A stretch of 64,000 bases of DNA from Schmidtea polychroa (Eukaryota): positions 126,480,001 to 126,544,000 of the forward strand of contig CM097885.1 of assembly GCA_044892525.1 (NCBI GenBank), in the 5' to 3' direction. The position numbers and the translations under genes were made by a program. Positions 11,306 to 64,000 of the stretch are shown piece after piece (within the stretch, counting starts at the first letter, position 1; each line of letters starts with the position of its first letter). The notes beneath the pieces were generated by a model, which was not told where the DNA came from, did no database searches, and saw only the letters and a program-made list of their open reading frames with translations.

Positions 11306-11339
11306 ATTGGTCCGCACACACAGAAAATTAATATATAAA
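11306..11339 (+). promoter_or_regulatory. Candidate Pol II promoter (reverse CCAAT plus TATA) upstream of element A
   Basis: ATTGG at 11306-11310 and TATATAAA at 11332-11339, upstream of a GTAAGC donor-like site at 11568. Motif match only. Confidence 0.3.
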
Positions 11340-11361
11340 CACGCACAAAAATCATAAAATT

Positions 11362-11430
11362 ACTGTTAATCTAAACATTCTACAGGTAAGAGTACTTCTA
11401 AATAAGACTGTTAATCTAAACATTCTACAG
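11362..11430 (+). repeat. 24-nt perfect direct repeat enclosing a 45-nt GT..AG segment
   Basis: ACTGTTAATCTAAACATTCTACAG at 11362-11385 and 11407-11430; 11386-11430 begins GTAAG and ends CAG. Confidence 0.85.
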
Positions 11431-11778
11431 ACCTACAATAACCGACAAGGATAATCAACAATCAAAATCATTTTCTAGGAGCATTCAGAGATCGAAATCG
11501 AGACAACTAATTACCGAGAAAGTACCGAATCTATTTCCGACTCAGCCGACAACACTACAAGCATTACGTAAGCAGATTTTTGTTTGAAAGTAATAGTAAT
11601 CATGAGATGTTCGTAAAAGTAAAATTAAATGAATTATGATTTTTCTTTTCGGTTGATCCCTATAAATATTTTTCTATGATTTTAATGATTAAATAAATGT
11701 TTTAATGATAAATGCGTTGTTTTAGATATATTTATGAATTAGTCGGAAAGTCTATAATTTTATGATTGTGCATTTTAT

Positions 11779-11915
11779 GAGAAACGTGGAGTTGAGACGT
11801 TTCATGTCATGGTGTGAGGGGCCTTCGGGAGCTCAGCGGCGGACATGAAACGTTTCAATCACGCAGCTGACTTGGGCCGAAAAGTGGGGCTTCCTCACGG
11901 GTCCGTCGCTGAAGG
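11779..11915 (+). ncRNA. Conserved structured RNA module (5' module of element A), family unknown
   Basis: 17-bp helix 11792-11808/11842-11858, inner CC(UUCG)GG hairpin, and a 30-nt block 11886-11915 identical in copy B; copy B shows compensatory changes in the long helix. Confidence 0.7.
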
Positions 11916-13292
11916 TTCCTAACTTAGTTGAAACAGTGGACCATAGTTATGTGAGAGATTTCAATTAGAAAATTTAGCTACGTTCATGATTCACAGTGAT
12001 TGAGGCGGCCACCACCAATTTTTCGTATCTGGAAAACTGTTATCCACCATAAGTCTGATTTTTAGCGCTAGTTCAGGCGACCGTAATCTAGAAATTCAAG
12101 TTCTTCAACCCTCATCACATCTTGAGATTCAACCATCTACTCGATTTTTCCGAAAGAATCATCTTAATTCGAGCATTTTACTCCAATACCTGATAATTAG
12201 CTGATAGGGTAGTATGAACAATTCATAAGAAAAAATCAAAACACAAAACTTCCAATGTAACAACACTTTATTTTTGAAAACGCTAGTTAACCAAAATATA
12301 TTTACTTACCAAATATGACCGAAAATTAGCCGTCGGAGCAAGATTCATGGTCGTCTTTTAGATAAGTAGTCCGATTCCCTGTCGTAGAATATATCCAACC
12401 TTAGAGAAAGCCCCGCAGTCATAAATCCAAATTCTGCAGGCGAAAGCGAGTAAACGGAGATGAACTGACAAACACATAATGTTTCAGATATTGTCACCCG
12501 GTAGAATCTCATCCAACTACCCATGTGTGAATGCGAAATACAATTGATATCGACAGTAGACACAGATAAGCATCCATGAGAATAGCACAGGACTACCAGC
12601 TTATCATGATCAGCGAGAGTATTTGTTGTAATATGTGTGCGACATGAATTATTAGATAGACAGCAGCCGGTGAGTGGAATCGATAACTATCACCGTGCAG
12701 TACACCGAACCGACCAATAAATCACTGACTTTTATCATGGTGCGAAAGTGTCTCGTGACACTGATAATGAGTAACAAATTAATCCGCTAGTCGACTTGGG
12801 GGTCAACTTTCTACTGCAAATTATTCTTGTAATGTTCACGTTTTTGACCACAATAATAATAAATAAACTGCCCTGCGTATATTTAGATCCTCGGTACGAA
12901 AGATATTAAATGGGAGAAAGAAATGCCAGTTGGGGAATAATTCGTCTCGACTATGTTAACTATAATAGTCTTGGGTCGAGGTCTAATAATGAATTGAGGG
13001 CTTAAGGGGGAATTCGGTGAGTATTGAATTCATTAATAGTACAATTGCCACCCCGGTCACGGATTTTGCATTTGTCAATACAATCGTGCATAATTATGTA
13101 AATAAAATTATGTAATAAATCTAGCAGTAACGAATTATTTACCTGAGATTGTAAGTTTCTTACTTGTCAGTATGGTCTCTTTATTTTGTTGTAAGTATCA
13201 AATATGAATAAATAATCTGTAGAGTAGAGTGATGTCTTCATAAATGCCGTATATTTGTATATCAATTTTCTTTTCTTTTCTAGCTAATTGTC

Positions 13293-14042
13293 ATGCTACC
13301 GAATAATCGACCAGCATTACGTCCTTGTTTCTCCTGCGCCGATAAAAACTCTATTATCAAGGATCTGCAGGACCAGATCGGTCGATACAAGAAGAAGATC
13401 GACGAGCTGGAAGGCACATGGTTCAGCCCAGTGCAAATGAAGGAGGTTCGAAAGAAATTACATCGCAGTGAGCATTGTCGGGATGCCCTGATTTCTGAGA
13501 GCCGTTCCCAACGGAGCTTGATAAAGGAGCAATCTGAAGCGCTCCACAAAGTATATTTACAAGCAGCAACTACGAGGCAATTAGTCAGTATACCCATTCA
13601 CGAAGCGGACAATGTTTTCCCAATGCATCACGACACCTCGTTTAAGTCGTCACCTCCGGCCAAGAAGTCTTGTCGGGAATGTGTTGAAGCCGACCTCTCC
13701 CCCAGGCATCCAGATATCGTGTTACCCAAAATCAGTAAGGTGCCAATCGCCGGTACCTCTACCTCGGCGGTACCTCCGATTAGTCAGGTGGCACCAAAAC
13801 CCAAGCGACGGCAATTGTCGAGAGCCGATCGCAAGAGAAAACAGCGAGAGCGCGCGGCCGCCAAGCACAACGAACAGCCAGCGGAGAATCCTATTAGTGT
13901 TCAGCACCTTCCGACGACAATTGATCTGACCATTGGGGTCCCAGGGCGAATTATCTCCGCCGCTGGAGTGACCTGGGAGGAAAATGCCTCCGAATTCTTT
14001 GATTTGGAAGAGTTGTTGGCCGACACTGAGTGGGAAAAATGA
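13293..14042 (+). CDS. 249-aa protein of unknown family (CxxC, coiled coil, CxxC, basic NLS-like, acidic-aromatic C terminus)
   Basis: Open 249 codons; ~85% aa identity to the 62150 (-) ORF over residues 11-95, with many synonymous differences; Y-tract-TAG acceptor 9 nt before the ATG; AATAAA at 14164. Confidence 0.85.
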   Translation: MLPNNRPALRPCFSCADKNSIIKDLQDQIGRYKKKIDELEGTWFSPVQMKEVRKKLHRSEHCRDALISESRSQRSLIKEQSEALHKVYLQAATTRQLVSIPIHEADNVFPMHHDTSFKSSPPAKKSCRECVEADLSPRHPDIVLPKISKVPIAGTSTSAVPPISQVAPKPKRRQLSRADRKRKQRERAAAKHNEQPAENPISVQHLPTTIDLTIGVPGRIISAAGVTWEENASEFFDLEELLADTEWEK

Positions 14043-14323
14043 GAACTCTCTGTCCGTTCAACCCGCTTCGAAAGACGAATATCAATGTTTCTTTTCTTAT
14101 TTTCTCATCATTCATGTATAACTGTGCGTTGTAAATTATCTACGTTTTATCCCATTGTGAGGAAATAAATCATGTTTGTTACTAATGTTCTTATTAATTT
14201 TGTAAAGTTTATGACTTAGATTTTAGTCATTCTAATCAATATCAGTAGAAATCTTTACAGGATCTATAAGTATCTTCTAAGTCCTGGTTGTTAGTTTGAA
14301 CGAACGGTCTGATGATATGAGTA

Positions 14324-14590
14324 GACGTAAGTCCTTCTATCGGCAGTCAAGGGAAGGAAGTCGAGGCCTCAGTGAGGAGTAGTCCGAAGGTAGGGGCTCA
14401 CCTGCTTACTGGCGTTTCGCTGACATAGTACATTACCAACGTGAAGCGATTCACGGGTACTATGCTGGAATATAAGTTGTGCGGGGTACCGCTCGGAGTT
14501 ACCAAGGGAATGGATAAAACAGACAAAGTAGACCATCATCTCCTAGGCGAAAAGTCAAATGGTAGAGGTGAGTCCGAGTAGTGCCCCAGC
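14324..14590 (+). ncRNA. Conserved structured RNA module (3' module of element A), family unknown
   Basis: GAC(GUAA)GUC and GUGAA(GCGA)UUCAC GNRA hairpins; CAUAGUAC/GUACUAUG helix is CGUAGCAC/GUGCUAUG in copy B; the first 26 nt are identical in both copies. Confidence 0.65.
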
Positions 14591-15318
14591 ATATACTACC
14601 CAACAATACCAATGGTAATTAGTTACATGTATCATCATGATAAATTTAGATGTGAGTTTTTGTTGTAATTATCAAAATAATGTCATAATTAGAAATTTTA
14701 AACTACCCACTACCAGTACACCACACAAATTGTCCAATTAACTTACATAGTGCCGTTTCATATACATATGAAATAGCGACGAGATACACACTAACCATAT
14801 TAATTGGTGCAAAACCTATGTGAGAACATTTAGCTTCGTTGTAGATTCCACTCGCGTCCATTTTCAACTTCATTCGTGTAAAATACAGTGTAATAGAATA
14901 TATTTTCGTAGAAATTGAATTTCATTTTTTTTCACCAATTCATTTTACCCAGTCAAGTCAAGTAACTAGATAATGGCTTTGGAAATCGTAATGCAAGAAA
15001 AATTATATTTTGAAATATTTTTGATTTAAACTTAAGCCTATAAATAAAAGTATAAAAAGACAGAAATGGAATTAATTTTTAAATGGTAAAATAAAATATA
15101 TAATGAAATAAAACTTACATATTTGATATTTATTAGGAATTCTTATAAATTTATTTTCATGAGTATTTTGAATAAAAAAATTAATTGTTTTGTTTTGATA
15201 TGTTAACATAAATTTTTTAAAGTTTTAATTTTTATATTAAATAACAAATGGCGATTTATTAATATATATTTATTGTAGTCTTTAATTAATTTTATTGTGA
15301 TAAATATTTAGATATTTC

Positions 15319-24300: not shown

Positions 24301-27300
24301 TCCAATAACTTGAGATTGAGCCATGATTGAATTGGAAACATTGGATAATTGTTCAACGCTTTGGCTAGTAAAAATTTGAATTGTGTTGATCTTTTTAAGA
24401 GCTCGATTAAATAGAATATCATATTCATAAGTTAGCAAGTTTATCTTTTTATCGCTAATGTCATAAATGGTTTCAGATAATTTAATTCAGGTAAGTTCCT
24501 CTTTTGTCATTTCATGATTTACAGCAATTAAATCGTTGATTTGCAATCGTTTTGATAAACTTTGAAAAATTGAATTAATGTCAATTAGAAATTTTCCATT
24601 AATAATTTGCAACGATCTTGTTGAGTCACGCAGATACAAAACACATGTCTACTTTCAAATATTACCTTCGATATATTGCTCATTGAAATACGACATCAAA
24701 CATTCATTATCTTCCATATTTCACTAAAGCCGAAAATTCAAAAATTTACATAAAAGATATCTTTTAAACAAAAATTCCTCGAACCAAACTCGAATTACCA
24801 GAATTAAAATCAATTTTCTAAATCCAAATTAATATCAAAATCTACAATAAAAAAAATAGCAACCTACTTCTCGCGCACACTAACAAGAATCGGTTTAACC
24901 ATACCGCGCGCACAGACGCGATGCCAAAAGCACCAAACAAACTGCCAGTCAGAGGTAAATGCTATTCCCCCTCTNNNNNNNNNNNNNNNNNNNNNNNNNN
25001 NNNNNNNNNNNNNNNNNNNNNNNNNNNNNNNNNNNNNNNNNNNNNNNNNNNNNNNNNNNNNNNNNNNNNNNNNNNNNNNNNNNNNNNNNNNNNNNNNNNN
25101 NNNNNNNNNNNNTGCTTTATCAATGTAGTATTGATTCATTTAGACAGGAATTTATGTTTATATAATATGTTTATAATCATTTTCTCCTGCATCTTTATTC
25201 ACTTTCTGAATTAAATTCAAAAATCTCCGTAAGCCAGTAACTAGAGTTGCAAGTATCTCTAGTAGTTGGCCACCATACACTGTAGGGGAAAGTACCTTTA
25301 AGTTTATATATAATGTAGTTCAATTTCTCCAATTCTTAAATATCCGTCTCTAATTCTTTAAAAGTTGTTCTATTATTTTATTATATAACCATTTTCGTAG
25401 AAATGCTAATATAAAATGGAAATATATTTTTAGAAATTTAAAGACAGTGACATTTATATATGCGAATCCAAATATTCTGTGATCGATAATCGTTTCAAAA
25501 AATTAAAGGTTGGATTAAATCTAGTTGCTGAATCTAAATAAAAAGAGAATTTAGAATTTGACTTACAAGAATAATGCAATAAAAGATCATTTTATTATCC
25601 GTGAAGATCCATTAGTTCTCCAGCGTACATATTCAACAGTTGCTACTGAAACTGTAAAACACGAATCGAATGAATTTATGTTTGTTTTGGAGAATACCAA
25701 AGAAGTCTGCCAATTCAATATATTAAAAAATTAGAAATTAATATTGTAATTAGAGTGTTCTTCAAGAAGATCGATCAGGAACTGAGAGTTGTGTATACTA
25801 TGATCAATATATATGTGACAATGGTTTCAGCGTCAAAGTTGGTGAGTAATTATCATTAACAATAATGCATGAATATCTAACCTCGAATAGGAGATTATGT
25901 TTATGTGAAGGATTCGTCAAGCAAATTACAAATAGTTAGAATTGATCAATTATGGAAGAATGTGTTGTTAGTAAAGAATTTTTACATTATTAAATTTTTA
26001 ATAAATTATTAAATTAAAAAAAAATTTAATTGAAAATTTTTATCCAATAAACGAATAAACGAATGAATAAATAGATTTTTGTTAAGTTGCCTATATATTG
26101 CTACGCGATAAAGACAGTAAATATAAAATTTGACAATCATTTAATTTTAATTGACAATATAACATTTTTTAAATTTCAATATTATCTTAAAATGAATTTT
26201 TTCCTATTGTGTGATAGAAATTATCCCATTTCTAAACTGCTACAGTATAAGTTATAATATATTTAATATTATTATTGATTTATATTGTGTCATAACAGTA
26301 ACTTGATTTGATATCATTTTTTCAAAGGATTCTTATTTATTTGTATATTAAATTTAATTACTTGATTAAGCTTTAACCCTTTCCAGCCCAAATTTTTTCA
26401 AAACAAAAAAAAATATATGCAGTAAGTAGGTACCAAAACTACTTATTTTATCATAAAAATATTTTACTTCATTTTTTTTGTTGCCCCCTTAGAAAAAATC
26501 AGTATGATTCCATTTGGCAACATTGGGCACATAGGTACCATACGTAAGATGGATAGATGGTAAAAATAAAATGCATTTTTCTTTGTTGTTACTAGTTTTT
26601 ATTGTGATATATTTTAAAACAATTTTTTTCTTTTGCAAGACAAAGTGCAACTTTACATTTATCACATTGCGTTCTCGAGTATGATGTTTTACATAATCGG
26701 CAGCGCTGTTTTTGTTCCACATGACTTGGCCAATGTCCTATGCCATCGTACTGAACATCTACAGTAGGAGTTATTGTTGTTACACGTTGTTTTTTTGGTA
26801 TACTGGGAACCGTATCTGAAGGTCTTCCTCGTTTTCGTTCTGTAGACTTGCCAACTAACAACAGGCCATTCGCAATTTCTGCTTGAAATTTTATAAGTGG
26901 CATATGTTTATTGCCATTCTGTTGGCAGTGTCGTCTATACAAAAGCCAAGAATTAACGATACAAATATTTATGAAGTTAAATATTATTCGTAAATATAAC
27001 CTTTTGCCCTTTATATTTATACGCTAGAGTTCTACGAGCATATCGTGAAGATCGACACCTCCCATAAACATATTGTATTCTTTTACAATGGCTGGTCGTT
27101 GGATGTGTACATATTTTTTGGAAGCTAATGACCATCTTTTGATGGTATCAAATGGTAAATGCCCTACATAGTTCGATGCCAAATGAACTGGTTTGTTATC
27201 TAGCCATTTTGTCACAGTAATGTTATTTGTAACGTCTGTTCTGAAGTCAAACGATCCTCTGCCTCGTCGTTTTAGAATGGAGTCCGCTTCTAAATCTATG

Positions 27301-30300
27301 CCAAGCATACGGCATACACGCACTGTACCAGTAGCCAAAAAACTTTTTTCATTCAGTGCAACTAATAATTTATGAGATGTGAATCAGTTGTCCATGAACA
27401 CTTTGAAATTTTTATTTGGTTCTAAATTTTCCAACAAGCGAAGAACAATGTGGCCACTTATACCCAAAGTACTCTCAGTTTTTGCGGTTCCTTTTCCAAC
27501 ATAAATTTCGTAGTCATATATGATACCACTTGCCCCTGCACGGGCAAATACTTTGATGCCCCACTTGTGGGGTTTATTCCTTATATATTGTTTCAGAGAG
27601 TTTTTACCTTTGAAAGGTATCAATATTTCGTCAATTGAATTGAATTCTTCAGGTTCAATCTTACCCATATTATACTTCACCTGGTTTAGAAATGGCCTAA
27701 TTTTAAACAATTTGTCGTGGGCTGGATCGATTCTTGCAAGGGCTTTGTTGTTATCATTGAAGTGTAAAAATGTTCTAAGTTTATCGAATCTATTACGAGG
27801 CATAACACTTGCTATTTTGTCATACCTAGTTTCAGCCATCCAATACATCCGATAACTAGGAACTTTTATTATTCCACTAAGTACCTGAATTCCTATAAAT
27901 TGTTCTATTTCATTCGGACTTGTATTAATTGATGTACCTGATTTTTGTACAGAATATAAATTTGTTTGCTCGGCAATGTTGTGTATAATGTCATTGTCAA
28001 TAAACATTTTAAAATACTGATACACTGATTTATCATCGTGTGGTGGATTTGAAAAATTTAAATTAAAATTTGTATCCACCGTATCGATTTCTTTTTTACG
28101 CCATGAACATGGTCGAACAGAATGTGCAGGTACATTTGGAGTAATATTTTCTAGGTCACTTTCACTTTCTTCTTCCTGGTTCGAAATATCTTCTTCGTCG
28201 GAATCGTTACCACTTGTAGTTGGTCGCTGCTCATCTATCGGCTCAGAGAAATGTTGCTGCAATAAGTCCTCTTCTAGATCATCATCTGACATTTCACTAC
28301 CAGAATCCTGAATCATACGATAAGCTTCTTCAGATGTAAGGGTGTTTAGATTTATCCTTTTATTGAAAGACATCTGAAAAAAAATTATTTCAAACGATAA
28401 ATATAAGAACAGAAGCAAATAGGTGAACCTAAATTAAATCTCAGACAAATTCAGGCATTTAGTGAGTAATATAATCTATAAAAACTTAAAGTTTACCAGA
28501 ATTATAGTTCAACATAAGAAGTAGGCCAAGTGCCCAAAGATTCCAATTGGAATCACAAATTCAATAGGTTATAAAATTATTATAAACATATATTTACCTT
28601 TTGTTCTTGCAATATCACAAACACTAAGCTTTTCTTGAAGTAAATCAATTTTTATTTTAGATAAATAATAACGAAACCACTTATAAAACAACACTTTTTC
28701 TTCGATGTGCGCAACATATAGGTTATGTGAGAGCAGGCTTACAAATGTCGTTACTTTTCTGACAGCTGATACAAATTTAGTGAGATAAAAATTGTGCCAA
28801 CTGTTAAAAACATATCTTACTATAGTTCTCACTAGTTACTGCCAACCGTTTTGGTAGTAGAGAGAAAAAAACTGAGTTTTTAACTAATGATTCCATTTGG
28901 AATCACTGGGCTGGAAAGGGTTAATAAATGTACGTTCATTAAATTTCAATTAGGCATCAACTTAAAGCACGTAGAATAATTAAAATTTGTCGAATAACTA
29001 TTTGAGTGCATGATATTTATTATTATTATTTAGTAATGTTTGATTATTATTTTTATTATTTAATTTGATCATTATTTTTAATAATGTTTTATCACTTTAT
29101 TATTTATTATGCTTATTAATTATTATTTTTAAACAATTAAATGATAATTTAAGCTTTTTGCTGCGAAAAATATATTTAATAAAAATGAAAAATTGCAATG
29201 TTTACTTAAGTTTTTATTCCTTTTTTTTCTCTGTCATTATAAGAATAATCATTCAAAATTTAATTTTTTATCTGTCGATTGATTTAAATTCTTTTTTTTC
29301 CACTGAAAATGGATCAAGAAATTACAATAAATAAATTAATTATTACCATAAAAGTAAGATGGATAAATTTTGGTCAGTAGATTAAATATAAATTAAGGTT
29401 TATGAAAATTTAATTAATTGAATTTAATTTTTTAATAATATCAGTGGCTAATTAGTATAATGAATATTTGCATTATTCCTCACACCAAGTTCTGTACCAA
29501 ATAATATTAAATAAATTAATTTATTTATATGAACACCTAGGTTAAGTTAATGAGAAAAAACATGGGAAAAAGTACTGAATTTTAAAAGCCTATAATAGAT
29601 GAGTTTCTTGAAGCCTGGACAACTTCAATGTTTCCAGAAGGGATATTTCCTTCTCATATGTCAATAGATCGTTAAAATTAAATCAATTTAAGGTGTTTGT
29701 CAGTTAATTAACCCGATTGAAATTTTATAATGAGAAATTATGGTATTACATATGACAAATAATAGCCCGGATTATTTTTATTCATTTTTCGTAACAGGAA
29801 CTGTAAACATAAAACAATTTCATGTCTCATGACAAATTCCATCAAATACCCATTACTGTGGTAAATCTCGACTGACTTTATATTAGTATTTTTTTAATTT
29901 AAAATGATCATTTTTTTAAAATAATGTTTTATTACTATTTATAATCTATTATTTATTATTATTATTATTATTTCTTGGTAGCATCATAAATTAATAGTTC
30001 AACAAGTAAATGATAAAATAATATTTTCAGTATATTATTTTATTCTTTATTTTATTCGTTGACTCAAATTAAATTGACTTATCACGATTACTTATTTTAC
30101 ATTTTTAAGAACTGGTTGAAATTGCAAATAATATTAGATAAAAATAACATATTAAATATTTGGCAATGAAATCTCAATCATAGTAAATGTATAAGATTTT
30201 AATAAAAATGATCACCTTGATATAAAAAATGTTTATACACTTAGTAGACAATGCATAAATTTGTTGAAACCGATTTGTGAAAGTATTGAAATTTTACTAA

Positions 30301-46800: not shown

Positions 46801-49800
46801 AATTTAGTTCTATCTACAAACATTAAAATATTATAAGAACTTCTTACAAAACATTTAAATGTCCCAACAAATATAATATACAAATATTTTTGCTTATAAG
46901 TTGTCAGTATCATTTATTTACATAGTTTCTTGTCATGTCTGATTGATTGCCGATAAAAATCCTGAATATAAAACTCAAATATATTGATTAAAATATATTG
47001 ATTAAAATAAGTATTTTACGTGTTACTTAATTTTAGAGATATGTAATTCTCGACTTTATTTCGTTCTCGAGAAATCGAGTTTAATTTACTGTTCTCCAGA
47101 ATTCTCAAGAAAACAAACTTTACAAAAAAACCATTTTTTTATTTTATAAATTCATTATTAATTGATTACTATCAAAAATGTAAAAAACGATTTTTTTTTA
47201 ATGATATCAAACCAGTGTAAAAACGATTTATTTTTAATGATATCAAAACGATGTAAAAAATGATGTAAAATACGATTTATTTTTTAATGATATCAAAACG
47301 ATGTAAAAAACGATTTGTTTTATAATGATTTAAAAACGATGTAAAAAACGATTTATATTTTAATGATTTAAAAACGATGTAAAAACGATTTATATTTTAA
47401 TGATTTAAAAACAATGTAAAAGACGATTTGTTTTATAATGATTTAAAAACGATGTCAAAATCGATTTACATTTTAATGATTTAAAAACGATGTAAGAAAC
47501 GATTTACATTTTAATGATATTAAATCAATGTAAAAAACGATGTATTTTTCAATGATTTAAAAACGATGTAAAAATCGATTTACATTTAAATGGTTTAAAA
47601 ACGATGTAAGAAACGATTTATCGTATAATGATATCGAACCGATGTAAAAAACGATGTATTTTTTAATGATATCAAACCAATGTAAAAAACGATGTATTTT
47701 TTAATGATATCAAACCAATGTAAGAAACGATGTATTTTTTAATGATTTAAAAACGATGTAAAAGACGATTTATTTTATAATGATTTAAAAGTGATCTAAA
47801 AAACGATTTACATTTTAATGATATTAAACCAATGTAAAAAACGACCGGTGATAATCTACCAATTTTAGCATTACGCTAGCTCCATCGCCTGTTATTGCCA
47901 CAATATCTTTTGCCCCAAACACCTTGAGTTTATCTTCAACCATTTGTAATAATATATTTGTAAATAATAAGTAAGTAAATAATAAGTAATAATATATTTG
48001 TAATAACTACCAATAATTCTAACTAAGCCTAGGTTGTCAGAATCTCCACTATAATAAATATGGATACTCAAATATCCACGTTTTCCTAGCACTTGTTCAT
48101 TTTTCAATAGACATACTAGTTTTCTTGTTCTGCAATTTTATTTTAATGATGGTATCGGCTTTAATTTCTTCACAAAATTAGCTAATTAGTTTCATTATAT
48201 CCATCTTTGGCGGCCAGTTTAATAACAATTTCCTTTAAATTTGGACGAGTGATACGAAAGAGTTTATCAATGTTCGACGTTGTTACTTTTAATCCGGTTT
48301 ATGATGCAGTTTTTCCTCGATTTAATTGGTTTTCCTTTACTGTTCGACTCATTGAATGTAAATTTTCATAATTTCAATGCAAACATGTAGAAGAGTTTTT
48401 TCATGACATTTGTTTGCAGCAAATATTGCACGTCGCTGTATCCTTGTTTTCCTCTTTAAAATACTTCCAACAATCGCTATAGTTGTTGTTCATTTTAAGA
48501 GTCTAAAAATATATTTCTATTAAATAATTGAAATCGACCTTAGAAAACACCATAAAGAAAACTGCATTAATACGATAGTAGACAACGTTAGAAAATTTTT
48601 ACTTATGTAATTAATTGATTATTAATTTATTTAAACAAAAAACATGTCAAAATTCATAATTATTAATGCGTTAAGTGAGAAAATAATGTTATTCTTTAAA
48701 TTCTCGAGAATCGAGAAAAAATATTGGTCGAGAATTCTCGAGAATAATCTTTACTTTATTTCTGTTTACGTTTTTCCCAAAAATATTAGATTACATGGAA
48801 ACTTCTTGTTTTAATAATGTTGAGGTTGTCAGTGAAATGTGAACTACACGTTTACCTCGGTAATACGGTGGGTATGATTCCAGACCATCGGCGCAATGCG
48901 AGTCACTTGCTTTTTTTCACTCGCTACAACATATAAACACCTTAAAACTTGTTTACACTATCATTTATTATTTGTGCTATAGCGCTAGGCTAAAAATAAC
49001 AGCTAAAAACTTTATTAATATCATTGAAGGAAGGTTGAGACTCATCATCTGACCCTTCAACGAATCTAATTATCTTGCTTGGTGGAGAGTCTACCATTGA
49101 TGTTGATGATTGATGAGGTGATATTGGCTGTTGAATGATAGGATTTGAAGGTGCGGGTTGTTGCGGCACTGGCTTAAAGTAAGATGTCTATGACGTTTGC
49201 TTCATTCAGCATCTCTTTCTCTCAAGGAATTCCAGTGTAGCTAGTGATGTCGTTTAGCAATTTTTCCCAACTTTCGAATTTCTCTTAATATAAATGCGTA
49301 ATAACACAATTGTAACACTATTAAATTTTGCGGTCAAATGGAGAGTGATGCGCGTGTTATGAATGCTGCATTCAAACTGAACTCCGCGTGGAAAATTTGT
49401 TGATTAAAAGCTGTACAGTGCATGGTTGCTGTAAGAACAAGACAAGCGCCGTAAAACGATTCATACCTATATACAATTATACAATTACTTATCTAACTCC
49501 GACTATATAAAATTCTAGACTATATAAACTTTTATTGATCAGAACAATTGATTACAAATTAACAACAGTACAAAATAATTCAATGCTGCAACAGTGGTTA
49601 TTGAGTGCTTATTACAACCTTCCGAGAGGAATAGCACTATTATTTATGATTTAGAATTTATGACCACCTAGTTACTACTTTTGGTTTCGATATTCAGCAG
49701 AGTCGATCTGAATTTGCAATAATTTTTTTTTGATTTCCTTTTTATAAGTGTCGTTTAATTCAAATTGTGTTTCGCTTTCATACTCTATTATTCAACGACA

Positions 49801-57200: not shown

Positions 57201-60200
57201 ACTGCAATATTAAAGTACTGTTTCGTGTTTTATATTCTCCGTATTAACCTTCGAATAGTCGTAAGAACGCTAATTTTTGGGCGATTGTACTAAATATTGT
57301 TAGGGTATATATACTGTTTTTTAAACTTAATAAATAAAATATTTTATTTCTGGCCTATACGCACGGAATATTAATATATTAATTATATTTGTTTTCATAT
57401 TATATTGCATGTTATATATCTAATATATCGTACAATTAATTTTCTATTGCGTGTTATATTTTAATATAATATTAATATCTTATATACTATTATATATTAG
57501 AGATATATTTTGTACTTTTAATGGTAATGATTTTTTATACTAATGGTTTATTTAAATTTTATAATATTATATTTAGTTAATAGCAATGTTTTATTCATGT
57601 AGTCCCTTTTTATTTAAATGTTAAGTATGTAATAAAATATAATTTTTTAATAATACAACAATACAAAACCATATCTGTACATTGTATTAAAGAATAAAAT
57701 TTGCTAGATGAGATATATCACAAAGGATGATCAATTGTTAGCTAGATTTATACAATAAAAGTTAACCAATACAATATACACAGAATAAAGAAATTTATAA
57801 CATAAAGGAGCCAGTTGTCATAAAAATAAAAATAGAAATAGTCATGATAGACATAAAATATGAAACCGTCACATAAATAAAATAGTCAATGTTGCTAGAC
57901 TTGATAGCATGGGGTATAATTGATTGTTTCTGGACGAATATTGCCTGGATTGTATTGTTTACCAATGATTCACTTTATTGCCTTTCTTCGGCACATATAT
58001 TAACCCTATATTTTATGGGTCCTGTCTTATAGTATTTGTTGAGGGTGAATGTAATGATGGGCCTACCCTCATCATCCAACATTTTCATCGTGTCGACTAA
58101 GTGCCTCGACTGCAAGTTTAACTGGTTTCATGCTTGAATAATTTCTAAATATCTTCATTATTATAATCACTCATTATGAGGCTGAAATTACAATATATTT
58201 AATTTATTATATAAAAAATGTTAAATTTAATGAACTTTACCAGAACTTCAACTTCAAATACTGGTTTATAATTTCACAGAATAAGTCGAACAAATTTTTT
58301 TATCATATACAATAATATATTATATTACAAAGCCTGTACGGAGAAGAAAAAGTATTAATTTTTTATATTTCGAATTTAAAGATGTGTGTATAAAATATAA
58401 ATTGTTATTAAAGACTTTGCTTACAATATATATTATTAAAACATCAACAAAAATTTTACATCAAATTAATAAAAATGACATATTGAGATTGACCGAATAA
58501 TAATATTTCATTTGTCACATCTCTTTACCCAGGAAACCAAAATATTGAAAATCGATATTGCGAAATAAAGTTCTAGTGTCCGACCCTACAACCCAAAATC
58601 GCAATATTCACGTGGATTGTCGGCGTTCAAATTTATTAGGTCGGTCAAAATCAAAAGAAACAATTTCCATATGAAGTCTTTTTCTAGTTGTTGAATAAGA
58701 TGACTAAAGTTTTTTATTGTAATTCATGTGTTCATTAGGGGGTTATTTTTAAAAAATCATTATAAGTTCAAAGGACTTTTCAATACCCGAAATTCGCAGG
58801 GCATTGCCACATTTTTAATGTTTTTGTTATGTACAGTTTCAGTTAATTTTGTTCGTGTAAATTTAAAAAAAGTTCTCGAGAATGAGAAATTCAAAAAGTG
58901 CAAATTCTCAGGAATTCTCGAGCACAACCTGTAATCATAAACTAAATGATTTTGTTGTGTACCACCATCATGCCGTCGCTGTTGTGGTTCATAAGGACAT
59001 CGAGGTTGGTAATTGTACTAAGGTCTTGCATGACATTCTATTCGATTATTTTGTTCAAAGTTTGAATGTTGTTGCATAGCTTTTATTTTTTAAACATTAA
59101 TTTCTTTCACTTCTTTGCGAACTTTTTCGTCTATTTTAAACCGTTCTTTATTGCCATCGAAATTGGTCTAATTCATTTTTTATCTCTTATCATTTCTTTA
59201 TTATCCAATGAATTCAGCAATAAAAATAATTTGAATGACTTTTTGTGATATCGATTTTCTTCAACAGTTCTTCAATCTTTATTGATCTCTACTGATTGAT
59301 CTTTATTATATTTCAAAGCTGAAGAAAGATATTCTTTAAGTGTAGTATTCTTCCGAAATGCAAATAATAATGTTTCTTATATTGAATTTTTCTTCTCTGA
59401 TTGCTCAAAAATTTTAAAAACATTAGATAAAGATGCTTTTTACTAAAGTTTAGAGTATAAATCACAGGAAATCATTATAAGTTCAAAGGACTTTTCAAAT
59501 TCTTTGACAAATTCATTTATTATCATCGATTCTTAAGACGTCTGATTAAAACAATTACTCGGAGTCGCCATATTAGAACGAGTAAGAACATTCATTGATT
59601 ATAATTATTTTTACAGCATAACCTTTGGAAACTTAAAAAATTGCTTGATCTGAGGATTCTGAGTTTGAAAATTCTGACTTATTTAAATTATTTATAAATT
59701 AGATATAGTTTGATATAGGTCGTGAAATAGTAGTATCAGTAATTGTACTGCTCTGCATTTAGATAATAAAAAAGTTCTCAGCGTTTTTATTCTACTATTT
59801 TATATTCTAAAATCCAGTACAATATCGTACGTTATAATTTTACCTATCAAATGTTTGTCACATAATCAATAACATGGAAATTATCAAAATAATATTTTTT
59901 AATTAAAATCAACTACAATATTAGAAATTTTTTATTAAATTTATTTTTCTTAGACTAACAAAGGTAATGTATTTTTACGATTGGGTAATCAAGATGATGA
60001 GGATGATAATGTGGATTTTGAAGAATCAGTAAATGAAAATCCACCGAGTCTTCCTTATATCGGAGTATTTAAATTACCTAATGAAACGAAAATGTAACTT
60101 GAATAAGTTATATAAATGTTATATAAACATTAATATTCTGCAGTAAAGGTGATGAAATAAAAGTACGTAGTGGGCATACAACAGAAAGTATTAGGAAAGT

Positions 60201-60336
60201 TGAAGCAACTAGTACTACATCAAATTTTCAGTCTATTCGTATTGAGGCCAATTCTAATAAAATGCAGTCGAGTAATTCATTTAATTTTATATTGTATTAA
60301 ATGTTTCTAGTTAAGGATCGTCTTGGTCGTAGATAA
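40840..60336 (+). CDS. C19orf47-like SAM-domain protein, multi-exon
   Basis: Exons: 40840-40846; 40893-41089 (WECFFNNAGI..YASLFVKNKI..LKSMGIEAIGDVIRILKY); ~41131-41164; ~43655-43730; ~43764-44260 (RRVVNPEIEGRYKITLP, SILKRLG); 59954-60093 (VFLRLG..LPYIGVFK); 60144-60271; 60311-60336 (IKDRLGRR*). These motifs match human C19orf47 in order, and splice phases agree across 44261-59953. Confidence 0.75.
42318..42590. mobile_element. hAT-type MITE
   Basis: CAGTGTTTCCCAACC at the left and GTGGAAACACTAG at the right; internal ATGCCCCAC-like repeats. Confidence 0.45.
44877..46291 (-). mobile_element. hAT element, internally deleted (C-terminal transposase half)
   Basis: TIR TAGGGTTTCCATT / AATGGAAACCCTG with perfect 8-bp TSD GGGGAGTG (44869-44876, 46292-46299); ILDVKTRWNT motif; dimerisation domain LYNAL..TSCERVFS..KIRSRL..FLKYYF in a shifted frame; CTCGAG subterminal repeats. 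Confidence 0.92.
47034..48753 (-). mobile_element. hAT element, internally deleted (N-terminal BED-finger half)
   Basis: Imperfect TIR TAGAGAT..ATTCTCGA; 7/8 TSD CTTAATTT / CTTTATTT; CWKYF..ATCNICCKQ..SST BED finger, IKLAAKDG, NLGLVRIIGS; CTCGAG subterminal repeats. Confidence 0.75.
47175..47845. repeat. Minisatellite, ~38-bp unit, ~17 copies
   Basis: Unit like AAAACGATGTAAAAACGATTTACATTTTAATGATTTA; AATGAT recurs about every 38 nt. Confidence 0.9.
50862..51036. mobile_element. Inverted pair of degenerate Penelope pLTR/hammerhead remnants
   Basis: Plus copy TAC-CTGACAA-T-GATAG(TAAAA)CTGTC-GAAA-TTTTT-C-GTA at 50998-51036; minus copy TAC-CTG..CTGTC-GAAA-TATAT-C-GTA at ~50862-50895. Both share CTGTCGAAA with 2623-2661. 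Confidence 0.6.
51580..51900. repeat. Imperfect tandem repeat of an AAATTATTTCA core
   Basis: About ten spaced AA(A/T)TATTTCA-like cores next to the gypsy remnant. Confidence 0.55.
51918..53525 (-). mobile_element. Internally deleted Ty3/gypsy LTR retrotransposon
   Basis: Gag FPPFLDK..PNCWFGVFEA (~53300); RT YLLMSFGLRNPEQTFSR; RNase H YTTVHRPLTY and IKFIQGRDNIVSDCLLR; ~85-bp direct repeats GAATAACTTTATTCGTATCAAAATTCAAA.. at 51919 and 53447 (LTR remnants). Confidence 0.8.
54175..54217. repeat. (TA)n microsatellite
   Basis: Pure TA run of about 21 units. Confidence 0.95.
54990..55400 (-). mobile_element. Ty3/gypsy reverse transcriptase fragment
   Basis: PWNMPLVFIKK..FLDFR, FPIPNVKE, YFTTLFLSSAFYQI..E.S..KAAFAT..Y across frameshifts. 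Confidence 0.75.
56164..58931 (-). mobile_element. Decayed hAT element (boundaries approximate)
   Basis: Dimerisation-domain remnant YEATG..NLEQLKNALCTVRATS..RIFS..SLNCLCFLKNYF (~56390-56600); CTCGAG subterminal repeats near 56190-56225 and 58875-58925. Confidence 0.6.
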
Positions 60337-60854
60337 TTATTGTTTTTATTTTAATATAATTTTCGGTGATTTTTGAAATTAATTATTAGTATTCATAAAA
60401 TTTTCGTAATAATATCTATAACTTGACATTTACTGACAACGGTTTCTTATTGGTTAATAATAATGATAATACTATAATTTTTCTTGATAAAAAAGTCTAA
60501 ATATCAAATGGTTTGTAATCAACATAATATAAACTGGCTATTTTCTTAAAAGATCAAAGAAACGGTATTTTATTTGAGAGATTGAGTACAGAAAATAAAT
60601 TCTACTCAAAAATTGTGGTCCAAAAATAGATATCGGAATATATTGCTTATACATAGGTATTTTTATTCATTTTTACTAAAAAGCAACTAAACGAAATTTT
60701 TGTACAATTGTACTTTAATACAATTTAGCTATACAGTAGATAAAACATGCAAAATGAGTATGAAAGATGTTTTTGAGGCATTAGGGTAGCTCCTCCAATG
60801 TTTAGCAAACAAATGATGCGAGAATTGCATTTGTTCCTCGTGTTGGCGGGTGAC

Positions 60855-61114
60855 TACCCGGATGACCCCCTTCATTACCGCTTTCAGTCCAGAGGATGAA
60901 TGCCCCATATCGATTACGCTCGTCTTGATTCTGGTCATTGCCGAGCAGGACCCGTACATAATCTACCCTCCAACATAGCACCCGTGAATCGCTTCACGTT
61001 GGAACTGTGCTACGCCGGCGAGACGCCAGTAGGCAGGTGAGCCATCTCCTTCGGACTACTCCCTACTGAAGCCTCGACTTCCTAACCCTGACTGCCGATA
61101 GAAGGACTTACGTC
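60855..61114 (-). ncRNA. 3' structured RNA module, copy B
   Basis: Reverse complement aligns to 14324-14590 with the hairpins preserved. Confidence 0.65.
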
Positions 61115-61406
61115 ATTTCATTTTGTCACCCATCGCAAGATTTCTAGCTGGAATTACCAATTGACCAATATTCCTCATTTTTCCGAAAAACTCTCAATGC
61201 TATTTACAAGTTCATATTATTTTCTAAGTTCAACACACAAGATAACGCATACATAAACGAAAAACTTTTATTATTAAATTTACTACACAAACACCTAGAG
61301 GATTTATACAAGGAATTTTACACGAACTGAATAACACCAAGGTAGAAAACGACAACAGAAAAGTTCGATCCGCTACGGAGAAGGAGGCCATTCTCCGGGG
61401 AAATCC

Positions 61407-62150
61407 TCATCTCTCCCACTCCGAGTCGGCGAGTAACTCGTCCAGATTAAAGAACTCGGCGGCGTTTTCCTCCCACATCGCCCCGGCGGCGGAGATAACT
61501 CGCCCGGAGATCCCGGTTGTTGGGACGACCACCGTTAGATCACTATTGTTGCTGACTGGAGCGATGATTGACGATGTACACTACTTGACAGACGCCCGTT
61601 CCCGTTGTTTCCGTTTGCGTTCGGCCCGAGACAGCTGTCGACGCTTAGGCTTTGAGGAGGTGATCGTTTGTATGGTTGATGAGGACGTGAGATTTAGCTG
61701 GACCTTACTGGTTCCGGTGAATACAATCTCTGGGTCTTTAGGAGAGAGCTCGGATTCTACACATCCATGGCAAGACTTCGCGAGTGGAGACGAAAACTTG
61801 ACAGAAGTATCATGGTGCGCTGGGAAGAGATTGCCGGCTTCGTCAATTGGGATCTTCGCTATTTTTCTAGTGGTCGCCGCTTGTATGTATAGTTTATGCA
61901 GTGCTTCCGACTGCTCTTTTATCAGGCTCCTCTGTGCTCGACTTTCGGAAATGAGAGCATCACGACAGTGCTCGCTTCGATACAATTTCTTTTGGGTCTC
62001 CTTCATTTGCGTGGGACTAAACCATGTCCCCTCCAACTCATCGATCTTCCTTTTGTACTTTCCAATTTGCGCTTGTAGATCCCTGATAACTGAATTCTTG
62101 TCCGAGCAAGAAAAGCAAGGTTTAAGAATGTTGTTGGTACTTGAAGACAT
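61407..62150 (-). CDS. Paralog of the 13293 ORF; 189 aa to an in-frame TAG, 247 codons if read through
   Basis: TAG at 61581-61583; the same frame continues to ..SGRVISAAGAMWEENAAEFFNLDELLADSEWER* (TGA 61407-61409), matching the C terminus of copy A. Confidence 0.8.
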
Positions 62151-63695
62151 CTTGAATAGCTATGAAGAGGAAATGCGAATAAAATCAAACTAAGTCAAAT
62201 GTGAGACATCATCATCTAGTCACACTCATACCATACTGATCATAGATTATCATACTGACAAAACGAGTTTATTAGCCTGAAGAGATTTCGTTACCCTACA
62301 GATCTTGTACGCTTGGGGTCATTATTTATACGAGAGTGGATCATTCATGCAAGATTTTACCGAAGGAAAGTAAGGTATTATCCTGGATAAGGGAAATTAC
62401 AGGTTGATGAAATTACAATTTAATCAATTTACCTGAAAACAGTACCTAACATTTAAAGAGAGTTTAAATTAAATTATAGATTTACCCCAAGACAAATAAT
62501 TTGGATGTGTAGATCTTATGCATGGATAGGCGATTTATCTTTAAATTAATTATTCAACATAAATAAGACTCTATCAATTGCTCTGCAATTATTTGTTTGC
62601 GATAAGTAAAAGTTTGTTAATTAATTTGCACTTGTTTAGTTGTGAGAAAATCAAAATGATTAAAACAAAGTTGAATATTTAAATGAATTTAACCACGTGT
62701 ACCCAAAATGTCTGTCTGGCCGCTATCTATCATTTCTGATCGGTGAGAAAATCGGGTGACTGTCAGTAGTATGTTTCAGTGAATTATGTTTCAGCTGACG
62801 CGTCAGGTTGGATTTCCTGTGATTAACAGTCTGTATAATCTACATATTGCGAGTAGCCTCTGTGATTATTCTAAAGCGCATGGCGCATGAAAATTTTCTC
62901 TCACCTACTTCTACTTAGTCATAATCGCTGACTGATGTCTTCATGCTCTATGCCATGCCGGTGTATGCATGCAGGTGTATTTTCCCTTATGACATATTAC
63001 ATCACTGACGAACCATGTATCTACCTCAAATGCTGCTGGTTATCTCTCATGGATATTTTGGAAAAACCGGATTTCTACATCATCAATGTTGGAATTAATT
63101 CACGATCCCTCAAATAGGATTTACTAGCTCGTCTCGTGGTCCTCCATCGCTATCAATGTACGCCTGCTACTGCTGTCAAATTGGAGATTTATTACTTATC
63201 CCAATGCTGGATTTTCCACCCGACGGGATGTGGACATTTTATGGTTTACTGGGTAAACAATTATTCTAATAAATTATGTTTTAGGGAAATACATTTTTAC
63301 TGATTGGAGTTATTCGCTTTTATTTTTAATGATTACTTAAACCTATTTAATTACGTGATTTCATACAATTTCATCTTTGAGAGGACATATAGCCGATGGG
63401 AATAGCGATTTCGCAAAAATCGTTAGTCGAAAATTTCAAGATTAAATTTCTAGCGAATTCGAGAACTATGACAACTATGGCATACATAGCACTACCAAGG
63501 TTGGACGGTTTTTTAACGAAAGACTTGCCTAGATCTACTGGATGATAAAGAAGAATTTTAACTTGATCAGACGCTGTTATAATACGCTAGTGCGACACCC
63601 TCAATCACTGCGCGAACATATCAAAATTTCTCCTATTGATCGATTCATTCTCCTATCCTACTTCCTCGTATGAATTTTCATAGAATTTAGTCACT

Positions 63696-63835
63696 CCTTC
63701 AGCGACGGACCCGTGAGGAAGCCCCCACATTACGGCCCGAATCAGCTGCGTGATTGAAAAGACCCCATGTCCACCGGCTGAGCTCCCGAAGGCACCTCAC
63801 ACCATGACATAGAGTATCTCAACACCACGTTTCTC
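63696..63835 (-). ncRNA. 5' structured RNA module, copy B
   Basis: Reverse complement aligns to 11779-11915; identical 30-nt block; long helix kept by compensatory changes. Confidence 0.7.
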
Positions 63836-64000
63836 CAAAATTTTAAATATCATAAAATCAACAAATAGTAAAAATTCCTTTCATTCAAATAAAATATTTA
63901 TTACCAATTTACTAAAACATTTAATTAAGTAAAACCTTCAAATCAAACGAAAAGAGAAAAATGATTATTAAATTTAGACTACTATAAATTCATAAATATA

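What the first reader, a model, noticed from the sequence alone, without database searches (positions are those of the whole stretch)
60855..64000. Copy B of the unclassified RNA-module/ORF element
Seen: same order and strand relationship of 5' module (63696-63835), acceptor and ORF (61407-62162), AATAAA (61267-61272) and 3' module (60855-61114). AT-rich similarity continues to the window edge, so the true 5' end lies beyond 64000. Its divergence from copy A supplies the covariation and synonymous-change evidence for function.
Basis: seen in the sequence. Interest (0 to 1): 0.8.

Follow-up and report, generated by a model that had tools for sequence, protein, structure and literature searches.

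The report
Unclassified gene flanked by structured RNAs
The flagged stretch is a real second, inverted copy of a roughly 3-kb unit in which a small helical, arginine-rich protein gene sits between two GC-rich folded RNA segments that are better conserved than the protein; it matches no described RNA, protein, transposon or virus family, and its function and mobility are unproven.

Summary
Observation confirmed. Copy B (minus strand, about 60850 to at least 63993) mirrors copy A (plus strand, about 11602-14592). Both have a 5' RNA module, about 1.4-1.5 kb of unalignable spacer, a splice acceptor 9 nt before the ATG, a roughly 250-codon ORF, about 285 nt of spacer with one AATAAA, and a roughly 270-nt 3' RNA module.

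The module cores differ at only 12-14% of sites. Four-fold degenerate ORF sites are saturated (72% differ) and pN is 0.18, so the protein is under purifying selection and the modules are under stronger constraint still. The modules fold much better on the ORF's sense strand, carry UUCG and GNRA loops, and show some pair-preserving substitutions. With two sequences this covariation is only suggestive.

The unit is compositionally foreign: ORF 50% GC and GC3 0.51-0.54, against 27-34% GC for host exons and GC3 0.20 for a host kinase. B's ORF has one premature stop and no frameshift; A's is intact.

Rfam, Pfam, PDB sequence and fold searches, and viral folds gave nothing. An exhaustive HMMER search found nine weak relatives, all fused into gene models with unrelated host genes, so the family looks dispersed.

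Best reading (confidence about 0.4): a dispersed, possibly mobile or virus-derived gene unit whose RNA ends are cis-acting signals. No LTRs, inverted terminal repeats, reverse transcriptase or transposase were found.

The parts
63849..64000 (-). Copy B: AT-rich upstream region, cut by the window end. Weak colinear similarity to A 11602-11766. A TATA-like run lies about 20-30 nt before the module in both copies.
   Evidence: local score 32 against 19.8 +/- 4.4 for composition-matched segments, P about 0.01.
63696..63838 (-). Copy B: 5' RNA module, 57% GC. A long bulged hairpin with a UUCG-capped apex is followed by a second bulged hairpin.
   Evidence: 88% identical to A 11779-11916. Sense-strand MFE -59.3 kcal/mol (z -2.9) against antisense -30.3 (z 0.07). 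All varying pairs of the joint structure stay paired, two by double change. No Rfam family.
62162..63695 (-). Copy B: non-conserved spacer, a putative intron or outron, 35% GC. The only colinear match to A is a conserved 12-mer at 63599-63610.
   Evidence: No nucleotide or translated similarity to A's spacer. No Pfam hit for its small ORFs.
62151..62161 (-). Copy B: splice acceptor (pyrimidine run plus AG at 62160-62161) and 9-nt leader before the ATG.
   Evidence: Read. The same layout occurs in A. Gene models of distant relatives read in frame from upstream exons into the family's own start methionine.
61407..62150 (-). Copy B: ORF region homologous to A's 249-aa ORF. It is broken by one premature in-frame stop and has no frameshift.
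   Evidence: 159 of 248 aligned codons identical, pN 0.18 against pS 0.85. The part after the stop still shows pN 0.24 below pS 0.64. GC 50%.
61117..61406 (-). Copy B: 3' spacer with one AATAAA (61267-61272), 135 nt after the stop codon.
   Evidence: Not alignable to A beyond chance. The AATAAA count is at chance level.
60850..61116 (-). Copy B: 3' RNA module, 54% GC. The core (60969-61116) has two hairpins, the second capped by a GNRA loop. The distal part (60850-60968) is closed by a long-range helix.
   Evidence: Core 86% identical to A 14324-14469 with no indels. Not coding in any frame. Sense MFE -55 against antisense -39.1 kcal/mol. The long-range helix is kept through changes on both sides although the distal part is 47% different.
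11602..11778 (+). Copy A: AT-rich upstream region weakly similar to B's.
11779..11916 (+). Copy A: 5' RNA module.
   Evidence: (MFE -60.9 kcal/mol, z -3.7).
11917..13283 (+). Copy A: non-conserved spacer, a putative intron or outron, ending in the acceptor AG at 13282-13283.
13293..14042 (+). Copy A: intact 249-aa ORF. Predicted helices at residues 16-39 and 46-98, a disordered middle, a basic arginine/lysine-rich helix at 177-192 and an acidic tail.
14043..14321 (+). Copy A: 3' spacer with one AATAAA (14164-14169), 122 nt after the stop codon.
14322..14592 (+). Copy A: 3' RNA module (core 14322-14472, distal part to about 14592).

Best explanation
Copies A and B are two old lineages of a dispersed, compositionally foreign gene unit of about 3 kb. 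The most likely origin is a non-autonomous mobile element or a virus-derived gene family, not a locally duplicated host gene. The unit is transcribed on the ORF's strand. Its RNA starts at or near the structured 5' module and probably runs through the 3' module. The ORF exon is joined through an acceptor 9 nt before the ATG, either by cis-splicing from an upstream donor or by trans-splicing. The ORF encodes a small protein with a helical hairpin or coiled coil plus an arginine-rich basic helix, which is the build of an oligomeric RNA-binding protein. The two modules are the cis-acting parts: folded RNAs that assemble the transcript into a particle, or direct its processing, stability or copying. 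They would be bound by the encoded protein or by a factor supplied in trans. Shown: the common architecture, purifying selection on the protein, stronger constraint on the modules, strand-specific folding, foreign composition, and relatives dispersed next to unrelated genes in other AT-rich genome(s). Inferred: that the modules and the ORF share one transcript, that the protein binds the modules, and any mobility.
For: Architecture is shared, with similar spacing on both sides of the ORF although the spacers are unalignable. Selection: pN 0.18 against pS 0.85; four-fold sites 72% different; module cores only 12-14% different, below codon position 2 at 20%. RNA level and strand: sense folds are 15-29 kcal/mol more stable than antisense, with z -3.7 and -2.9 for the 5' module. 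G-U pairs and pair-preserving changes are seen. The modules are not coding. Foreign composition: ORF 50% GC, GC3 0.51-0.54, modules 51-57% GC, against host exons at 27-34% GC and a host kinase with GC3 0.20. Synonymous sites that are saturated yet still GC-rich argue against long residence under the host's AT-biased mutation. Dispersal: all nine HMMER relatives share the core (10 invariant columns, among them a Trp-Pro pair, a Gln-Arg pair and a Pro-His pair, plus a near-invariant Gly-Thr before the Trp and an arginine-rich run in most members). Eight of the nine are fused in gene models to unrelated host genes (SLC6 transporter, furin-like protease, tyrosine phosphatase, mitoribosomal L21, glycine dehydrogenase, CRAL-TRIO, actin) and none to a transposon domain. 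One copy (B) carries a premature stop, as decaying insertions do. The predicted protein is two long helices at pLDDT above 90 plus a basic helix.
Against: Only two copies are available, and they lie 46 kb apart, which also fits an old local inverted duplication. No terminal repeats, target-site duplication, poly(A) tail, reverse transcriptase, transposase or capsid gene were found. A conserved acceptor, hence probably an intron, is unexpected for an RNA-copied element. No DNA of the distant relatives could be fetched, so it is unknown whether they carry the modules. Covariation is statistically weak with two sequences. The AATAAA between the ORF and the 3' module could end the mRNA before the 3' module. 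High GC could also be held by selection on RNA structure or expression.
Confidence: 0.4

Rival explanations
1. A lineage-specific host gene family, here an old inverted duplicate pair. Its mRNAs carry strongly structured 5' and 3' untranslated regions for post-transcriptional control, for example autoregulation by the encoded protein, processing of the long hairpin by a double-strand RNA nuclease, or control of polyadenylation.
For: Two copies lie within 46 kb. The gene structure is conserved, with an acceptor 9 nt before the ATG. There is long-term purifying selection. No transposon hallmarks were found. The long hairpin of the 5' module is pri-miRNA-like in size, although the best Rfam miRNA score is far below threshold (20.6 bits against 50).
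Against: GC3 of 0.51-0.54 at saturated synonymous sites, in a genome whose own genes have GC3 near 0.20, is hard to keep in place. Relatives sit next to many unrelated genes. One copy has a premature stop.
Confidence: 0.3
2. The modules are independent small non-coding RNA genes that merely neighbour the ORF gene, and the trio was duplicated together.
For: The modules are more conserved than the ORF. TATA-like runs precede the 5' module. An AATAAA lies between the ORF and the 3' module.
Against: Order, strand and spacing are kept over a divergence that erased everything else. No known RNA family matches. No T-run terminator follows the 5' module. All three parts share the same atypical GC content.
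Confidence: 0.12
3. Both copies are internal fragments of an ordinary LTR or non-LTR retrotransposon, for example a gag-like or ORF1-like gene with its untranslated regions.
For: A small coiled-coil plus basic protein is the general build of many first-ORF proteins of non-LTR elements (established knowledge). Composition is foreign.
Against: For the complete copy A there are no LTRs, no reverse transcriptase, integrase or protease ORFs within several kb, and no 3' poly(A) or microsatellite tail. No Pfam Gag, ORF1 or zinc-knuckle domain is found. None of the relatives is fused to a retroelement domain. An acceptor just before the ATG implies an intron.
Confidence: 0.08
4. The module similarity reflects recent gene conversion between the two copies and not selection on RNA.
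For: The copies are linked at 46 kb, and the identity steps between modules and spacers are sharp.
Against: Conversion would have to hit exactly the two folded segments and skip the ORF between them. Module differences are spread along the modules, are rarer at paired than at unpaired positions (11 of 98 against 11 of 53 in the 5' module) and tend to keep pairs.
Confidence: 0.05

Closest known systems
ORF1-only non-autonomous derivatives of LINEs (HAL1 type) and LINE first-ORF proteins in general
   Same: A small protein with a long coiled-coil-like helix and a basic region, encoded on an RNA whose ends carry the cis signals. No polymerase of its own.
   Different: No RRM, C-terminal domain, zinc knuckle or esterase domain. 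No poly(A) tail or target-site duplication. An acceptor, hence probably an intron, before the ATG. No partner element known. No sequence or fold match.
Penelope-like elements and retrozymes
   Same: Elements of invertebrate genomes that can keep introns and carry conserved structured or catalytic RNA in their terminal regions.
   Different: No hammerhead or other known ribozyme at E up to 10. No reverse transcriptase or GIY-YIG nuclease. No terminal repeats.
Arginine-rich protein plus structured RNA target pairs of viruses. I had in mind the delta antigen with the delta agent RNA, and Rev-type proteins with their response elements.
   Same: A short oligomerising helical protein with an arginine-rich helix, together with highly constrained folded RNA on the same transcript.
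   Different: Neither came back as a hit: no Pfam delta-antigen match, no HDV-like ribozyme in Rfam, and no viral fold match below E 0.01. The unit is genomic DNA with AT-rich spacers and a splice acceptor.
mRNAs controlled by conserved hairpins in their own untranslated regions (I had in mind the DGCR8 5' hairpins)
   Same: A long conserved hairpin in the first, non-coding part of a protein-coding transcript.
   Different: Here there are two multi-hairpin modules at both ends, dispersed relatives and foreign composition. No miRNA family matches above threshold.

Membership tests
LTR retrotransposon | Long terminal direct repeats flanking the unit | tested here: not met
   Copy A: no direct repeat of 35 nt or more other than AT-rich chance matches within 6000-20000. 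Copy B cannot be tested on its 5' side, which is cut by the window end.
LTR retrotransposon | gag-pol coding capacity (protease, reverse transcriptase, integrase) | tested here: not met
   Pfam finds none in the ORF, in the spacer ORFs or in neighbouring ORFs, which are host bromodomain/BAH exons.
Non-LTR retrotransposon / SINE-like retroposon | Reverse transcriptase ORF, or a 3' end shared with a LINE partner, and a poly(A) or simple-repeat tail | tested here: not met
   No reverse transcriptase. No A-run or microsatellite after either 3' module. A partner LINE could not be searched for.
Non-LTR retrotransposon / SINE-like retroposon | Target-site duplication | tested here: inconclusive
   The ends of the unit are not defined to the base. 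No obvious short repeat at the limits of similarity.
Penelope-like element / retrozyme | Hammerhead ribozyme in the terminal repeats | tested here: not met
   cmscan at E up to 10 over both copies gives no ribozyme family.
Delta-like agent (Ribozyviria) | HDV-type ribozyme and delta-antigen homologue | tested here: not met
   No Rfam HDV-like hit. No Pfam, PDB or viral fold hit for the protein.
Cut-and-paste DNA transposon | Terminal inverted repeats and a transposase, or ends shared with an autonomous partner | tested here: not met
   No inverted repeats at the ends of A beyond 17-nt, 76% chance matches. The only transposase in the window is an unrelated piggyBac-like ORF at 27384-28418.
Helitron | 5' TC, and a short 3' hairpin followed by CTRR | tested here: inconclusive
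   No conserved CTRR after the 3' module in the two copies. The exact ends are unknown.
Any Rfam 15 family (4227 models) | Score at or above the gathering threshold | tested here: not met
   No hits in the whole window at gathering level. Only chance-level hits at E 1-8 within the two copies.
Any Pfam-A family / solved structure | Significant sequence or fold match of the ORF product | tested here: not met
   Pfam best E 0.006, below cut-off, generic coiled coil. PDB phmmer best E 0.24. Profile hits come only from the fused host parts. Foldseek PDB best E 3.8. BFVD best E 0.018 with TM 0.2.

The most novel reading that the evidence does not exclude
The unit is a member of an undescribed class of selfish or virus-derived genetic element of AT-rich animal genomes. 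It would be a small arginine-rich coiled-coil protein gene bracketed by two highly constrained folded RNAs, possibly new catalytic, packaging or copying signals, that persists and spreads as a ribonucleoprotein without encoding any polymerase or recombinase.
Probability: 0.2. Interest if true: 0.8.

Novelty: new variant of a known kind. Interest (0 to 1): 0.55.

Why it matters
If the modules and the ORF act together, this is a compact natural pairing of a small RNA-binding-type protein with two RNA folds constrained more tightly than the protein itself, and none of the three is in any reference library. That would add new structured RNA families. It would add a new protein family that is currently hidden inside chimeric gene models, and would flag those models as mis-annotated. 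It might add a new type of dispersed element whose way of spreading is not explained by known machinery. If it proves to be a host gene family instead, it is still an unusually clear case of untranslated-region structure under stronger selection than the coding sequence.

Tried and rejected
- **Known RNA families.** Rfam at gathering level over the whole window, and at E up to 10 over both copies, gave nothing.
- **Known protein families.** Pfam, PHROGs, PDB sequence and PDB profile gave nothing real. The profile hits came from host parts fused to the relatives.
- **Word-indexed protein searches.** These found no relatives of the window ORF, and only UniParc-only entries for a relative.
- **DNA of relatives.** Exact-protein look-ups failed for the window proteins and for the relatives. 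Pattern and protein scans of viral, metagenome and prokaryote-genome collections found nothing ([error], 69, 70, 71). No third copy of the modules could therefore be obtained.
- **Organism.** It could not be named. The kinase search gave an 85% identical UniParc-only protein in the same accession range as the ORF relatives, and Logan/ENA contigs without names. A paper search for the run accession found nothing.
- **Second conserved gene in the spacer.** Translated comparison of the pieces found none.
- **Modules as exons.** Rejected: stops in all frames, indels not in threes, differences not periodic.
- **Long-range pairing between the 5' and 3' modules.** No better than shuffles.
- **5' and 3' modules as diverged repeats of each other.** Not significant at sequence level. 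Only a shared 8-mer in the same structural position and a similar hairpin build.
- **Literature.** One keyword search returned only general LINE and Penelope papers.

1. None was put into a tool, a note or this report, and nothing rests on them.
2. Before I judged that the unit might be virus-like, I worked out the place of the break in B's ORF in my reasoning. The length of B's first open ORF segment, which implies that place, appears in the tool's ORF list, in my script output and in notebook entry 1. The coordinates of that segment were also used as a query reference. I have not repeated the place here.
Full report
**Setting**

The window is AT-rich (about 27% GC in most 2-kb bins). It carries ordinary animal-type genes:
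- bromodomain and BAH exons of a polybromo-like gene at 15.5-23.4 kb, and a nitrilase-family exon at 38.8 kb;
- a single-exon protein kinase at 1454-2254 and a piggyBac-like transposase ORF at 27384-28418.

CpG is not depleted (observed/expected 1.06). One N run lies at 24975-25112 and was left alone. The organism could not be named with the tools at hand.

Yes. BLAST of 60001-64000 against the rest of the window gives exactly three matches. All are inverted and colinear with 11757-14469:

| Part | Copy B | Copy A | Identity |
|---|---|---|---|
| 5' module | 63858-63696 | 11757-11915 | 84% |
| ORF | 62120-61406 | 13323-14043 | 67% |
| 3' module core | 61114-60969 | 14324-14469 | 86% |

Alignments extend the 3' module with weaker similarity to about 60850 / 14592. 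A covariance model of the 5' module finds only these two sites in 64 kb (181.6 and 178.4 bits; the next hit is 13.8 bits and is the hairpin read backwards).

Between the 5' module and the ORF (about 1.4 kb in A, 1.5 kb in B), and between the ORF and the 3' module (about 280-290 nt), the copies are unalignable at both nucleotide and translated level. The spacings are nevertheless alike.

Both copies have a pyrimidine run plus AG followed by a 9-nt leader and the ATG.

Upstream of the 5' module a weak AT-rich similarity reaches B 63993. It scores above composition-matched segments of the same window (P about 0.01), so B very probably continues beyond the window.

**The ORF**

Copy A encodes an intact 249-aa protein. 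Copy B's homologous frame has one premature in-frame stop, no frameshift and one in-frame two-codon length difference. It ends at the same terminal stop.

| Measure | Value |
|---|---|
| Identical residues over aligned codons | 159 of 248 |
| p-distance, codon position 1 | 0.27 |
| p-distance, codon position 2 | 0.20 |
| p-distance, codon position 3 | 0.57 |
| p-distance, four-fold sites (saturation) | 0.72 |
| pN, Nei-Gojobori | 0.18 |
| pS, Nei-Gojobori | 0.85 |

The segment after B's premature stop still has pN 0.24 below pS 0.64. The stop is therefore recent relative to the divergence, or is tolerated.

AlphaFold with the small family alignment predicts:
- two long helices, residues 16-39 and 46-98, the latter at pLDDT 95-97;
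- a disordered middle;
- a basic helix at residues 177-192.

Nothing matches in Pfam, PHROGs, PDB by sequence or fold, or viral predicted folds.

**Relatives**

The word-indexed search found none. The exhaustive HMMER search of 1.84 billion representatives found nine (E 7e-8 to 9e-4).

They share a clear core:
- ten invariant columns, among them a Trp-Pro pair (with a near-invariant Gly-Thr before the Trp), a Gln-Arg pair and a Pro-His pair;
- an arginine-rich run further on in most members.

Eight of the nine are chimeric gene models in which this core is joined to an unrelated host protein. The host proteins are an SLC6 transporter, a furin-like protease, a tyrosine phosphatase, mitoribosomal L21, glycine dehydrogenase, a CRAL-TRIO protein and actin. 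None is joined to a transposon domain.

In seven of the nine the family part begins at its own methionine; the other two are a model that reads straight through from host sequence and a fragment that starts inside the core. In two of the models the upstream exon reads in frame into that methionine. That is what a gene finder does with an acceptor just before the ATG.

All nine exist only as UniParc entries in one narrow accession range. The closest relatives of the window's kinase fall in the same range. The family is therefore dispersed in at least one related AT-rich genome. No DNA for them could be obtained.

**The RNA modules**

The modules are not coding: stops occur in every frame, indels of 1-2 nt are present, and there is no three-base periodicity of differences.

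They fold well on the ORF's sense strand and poorly on the other strand:

| Segment | Sense MFE (kcal/mol) | Antisense MFE (kcal/mol) | z-score, sense / antisense |
|---|---|---|---|
| A 5' module | -60.9 | -42.9 | -3.7 / -2.4 |
| B 5' module | -59.3 | -30.3 | -2.9 / 0.07 |
| A 3' core | -49.6 | -34.9 | -1.9 / 0.02 |
| B 3' core | -55.0 | -39.1 | -1.9 / -0.6 |

- **5' module.** It is a long bulged hairpin whose apex carries a C(UUCG)G loop, followed by a second bulged hairpin.
- **3' module.** It has a small stem, a long hairpin, and a second hairpin with an asymmetric internal loop and a GNRA-capped apex. A distal domain is closed by a helix of about 20 bp.

On the joint RNAalifold structures every varying pair listed keeps a standard pair:
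- 5' module: 48 pairs, 6 varying, 2 by double change.
- 3' module: 66 pairs, 6 with double change. These include the long-range helix, although the sequence it encloses is 47% different.

This count leans towards the structure because the structure was derived from the same two sequences. When the fold of one copy alone is tested in the other, the excess of kept pairs is modest (P 0.015, 0.14, 0.15 and 0.03). I therefore rate covariation as suggestive.

The stronger argument is rate. The module cores differ at 11.9% and 13.7% of sites while four-fold sites are saturated. The modules are the most constrained parts of the unit, more so than second codon positions.

**Composition**

| Part | GC |
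|---|---|
| Host exons | 27-34% |
| Host kinase, GC3 | 0.20 |
| Unit ORF | 50% |
| Unit ORF, GC3 | 0.51-0.54 |
| Modules | 51-57% |
| 5' spacers | 35-36% |

Two copies whose synonymous sites have fully diverged, yet are both still GC-rich in such a genome, are more easily explained in one of two ways. They may be two lineages that diverged while being selected elsewhere and arrived later. Or their composition is held by selection. Long neutral residence explains them less well.

**What it is not**

- For copy A, which lies wholly inside the window, there are no flanking direct or inverted repeats beyond AT-rich chance matches.
- Nearby there is no reverse transcriptase, integrase, protease, transposase or capsid-like ORF.
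- There is no A-run or microsatellite at the 3' end.
- No known ribozyme, miRNA, snRNA, rRNA fragment or viral RNA element is detected.
- The 5' and 3' modules are not significantly similar to each other in sequence, and they do not pair with each other better than shuffles.

**Most likely mechanism**

My preferred reading (confidence about 0.4) is a dispersed, foreign-composition gene unit, that is, a non-autonomous mobile element or a virus-derived family. Its transcript carries two cis-acting folded RNAs and encodes a small oligomeric arginine-rich protein that probably binds them.

- **Shown:** architecture, selection, strand-specific structure, composition, and dispersed relatives.
- **Inferred:** a common transcript, protein-RNA binding, and mobility.

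The main rival (about 0.3) is a lineage-specific host gene family with regulatory structured untranslated regions. The linkage of the two copies and the conserved acceptor favour it. The composition and the dispersed relatives count against it.

Minor rivals:
- separate small-RNA genes beside the ORF;
- fragments of an ordinary retrotransposon;
- gene conversion.

**Caveats on the transcript model**

- The donor next to the 5' module is weak and sits 2 nt apart in the two copies. The acceptor could instead serve an upstream donor or trans-splicing.
- The single AATAAA in each 3' spacer is at chance frequency (3.3 per kb per strand), though it lies at similar distances from the stop codon (122 and 135 nt).
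- If that AATAAA is used, the 3' module would lie outside the mRNA.
- Both 3' modules begin with a perfect 5'-splice-site-like heptamer. I note this without interpreting it.

**Novelty and score**

No reference library holds either RNA module or the protein, and the combination does not fit a described class. However, with two copies, no transcript data and no DNA from relatives, the claim of a new class is not established.

I file it as a new variant of a known general kind: a dispersed gene unit with cis-acting structured RNA ends and a small RNA-binding-type protein. Interest is 0.55.

The most novel reading not excluded is a new polymerase-less ribonucleoprotein-type element. I give it about 0.2 probability.

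These are listed in Tried and rejected. I worked out the place of B's break in my reasoning, and it is implied in early tool and script outputs, in query references and in one notebook entry. It is not repeated in this report.

Noticed in passing
window 11994-12005 (+) and 63599-63610 (-): The 12-mer CAGTGATTGAGG is conserved about 80 nt downstream of the 5' module in both copies, inside otherwise unalignable spacer. Eight of its bases are complementary to the 3' strand of the module's long hairpin, so it could form an alternative pairing.
   Followed up: partly
window 11895-11911 and 14451-14467 (+); 63696-63716 and 60967-60987 (-): The 8-mer TCACGGGT sits in the same structural place (3' strand of a small apical hairpin plus the junction) in the second hairpin of both the 5' and the 3' module, in both copies. 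These two hairpins share a build with a 5'-side internal loop and a capped apex. Overall 5'/3' sequence similarity is not significant.
   Followed up: partly
window 14324-14331 (+) and 61107-61114 (-): Both 3' modules begin with ACGTAAGT, a consensus-like 5' splice site or U1-binding sequence, about 150 nt downstream of the AATAAA.
   Followed up: no
window 61546-62193 (+): A 215-aa ORF lies on the strand opposite B's ORF, and a 105-aa ORF lies opposite A's. The antisense frame shares its wobble positions with the sense frame, so it looks conserved, but it has no family match. It is most likely a by-product of codon composition.
   Followed up: partly
window 16274-16880 and 29260-29881 (+): A repeat of about 610 bp, 94-99% identical, 13 kb apart. 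One copy is inside the polybromo-like gene and the other lies next to the piggyBac-like ORF. Possibly a transposon end or a miniature derivative.
   Followed up: no
window 27384-28418 (-): A piggyBac-type (DDE_Tnp_1_7) transposase ORF covering profile positions 3-213 of 349. It is unrelated to the finding.
   Followed up: no
window 1454-2254 (-): A single-exon protein kinase with GC3 0.20. It belongs to a family of paralogues at 45-50% identity, with one 85% identical UniParc-only relative.
   Followed up: partly
window 47156-47914: A tandem array of about 20 copies of a 38-nt unit.
   Followed up: no
window 10985-11280 and 11281-11600 (+): An A-rich low-complexity tract (18% GC) lies just upstream of copy A. 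It is followed by a 33% GC stretch holding a 24-nt direct duplication that brackets a GTAAG-type donor-like site. This stretch may belong to the unit's 5' part or to another transcript.
   Followed up: no
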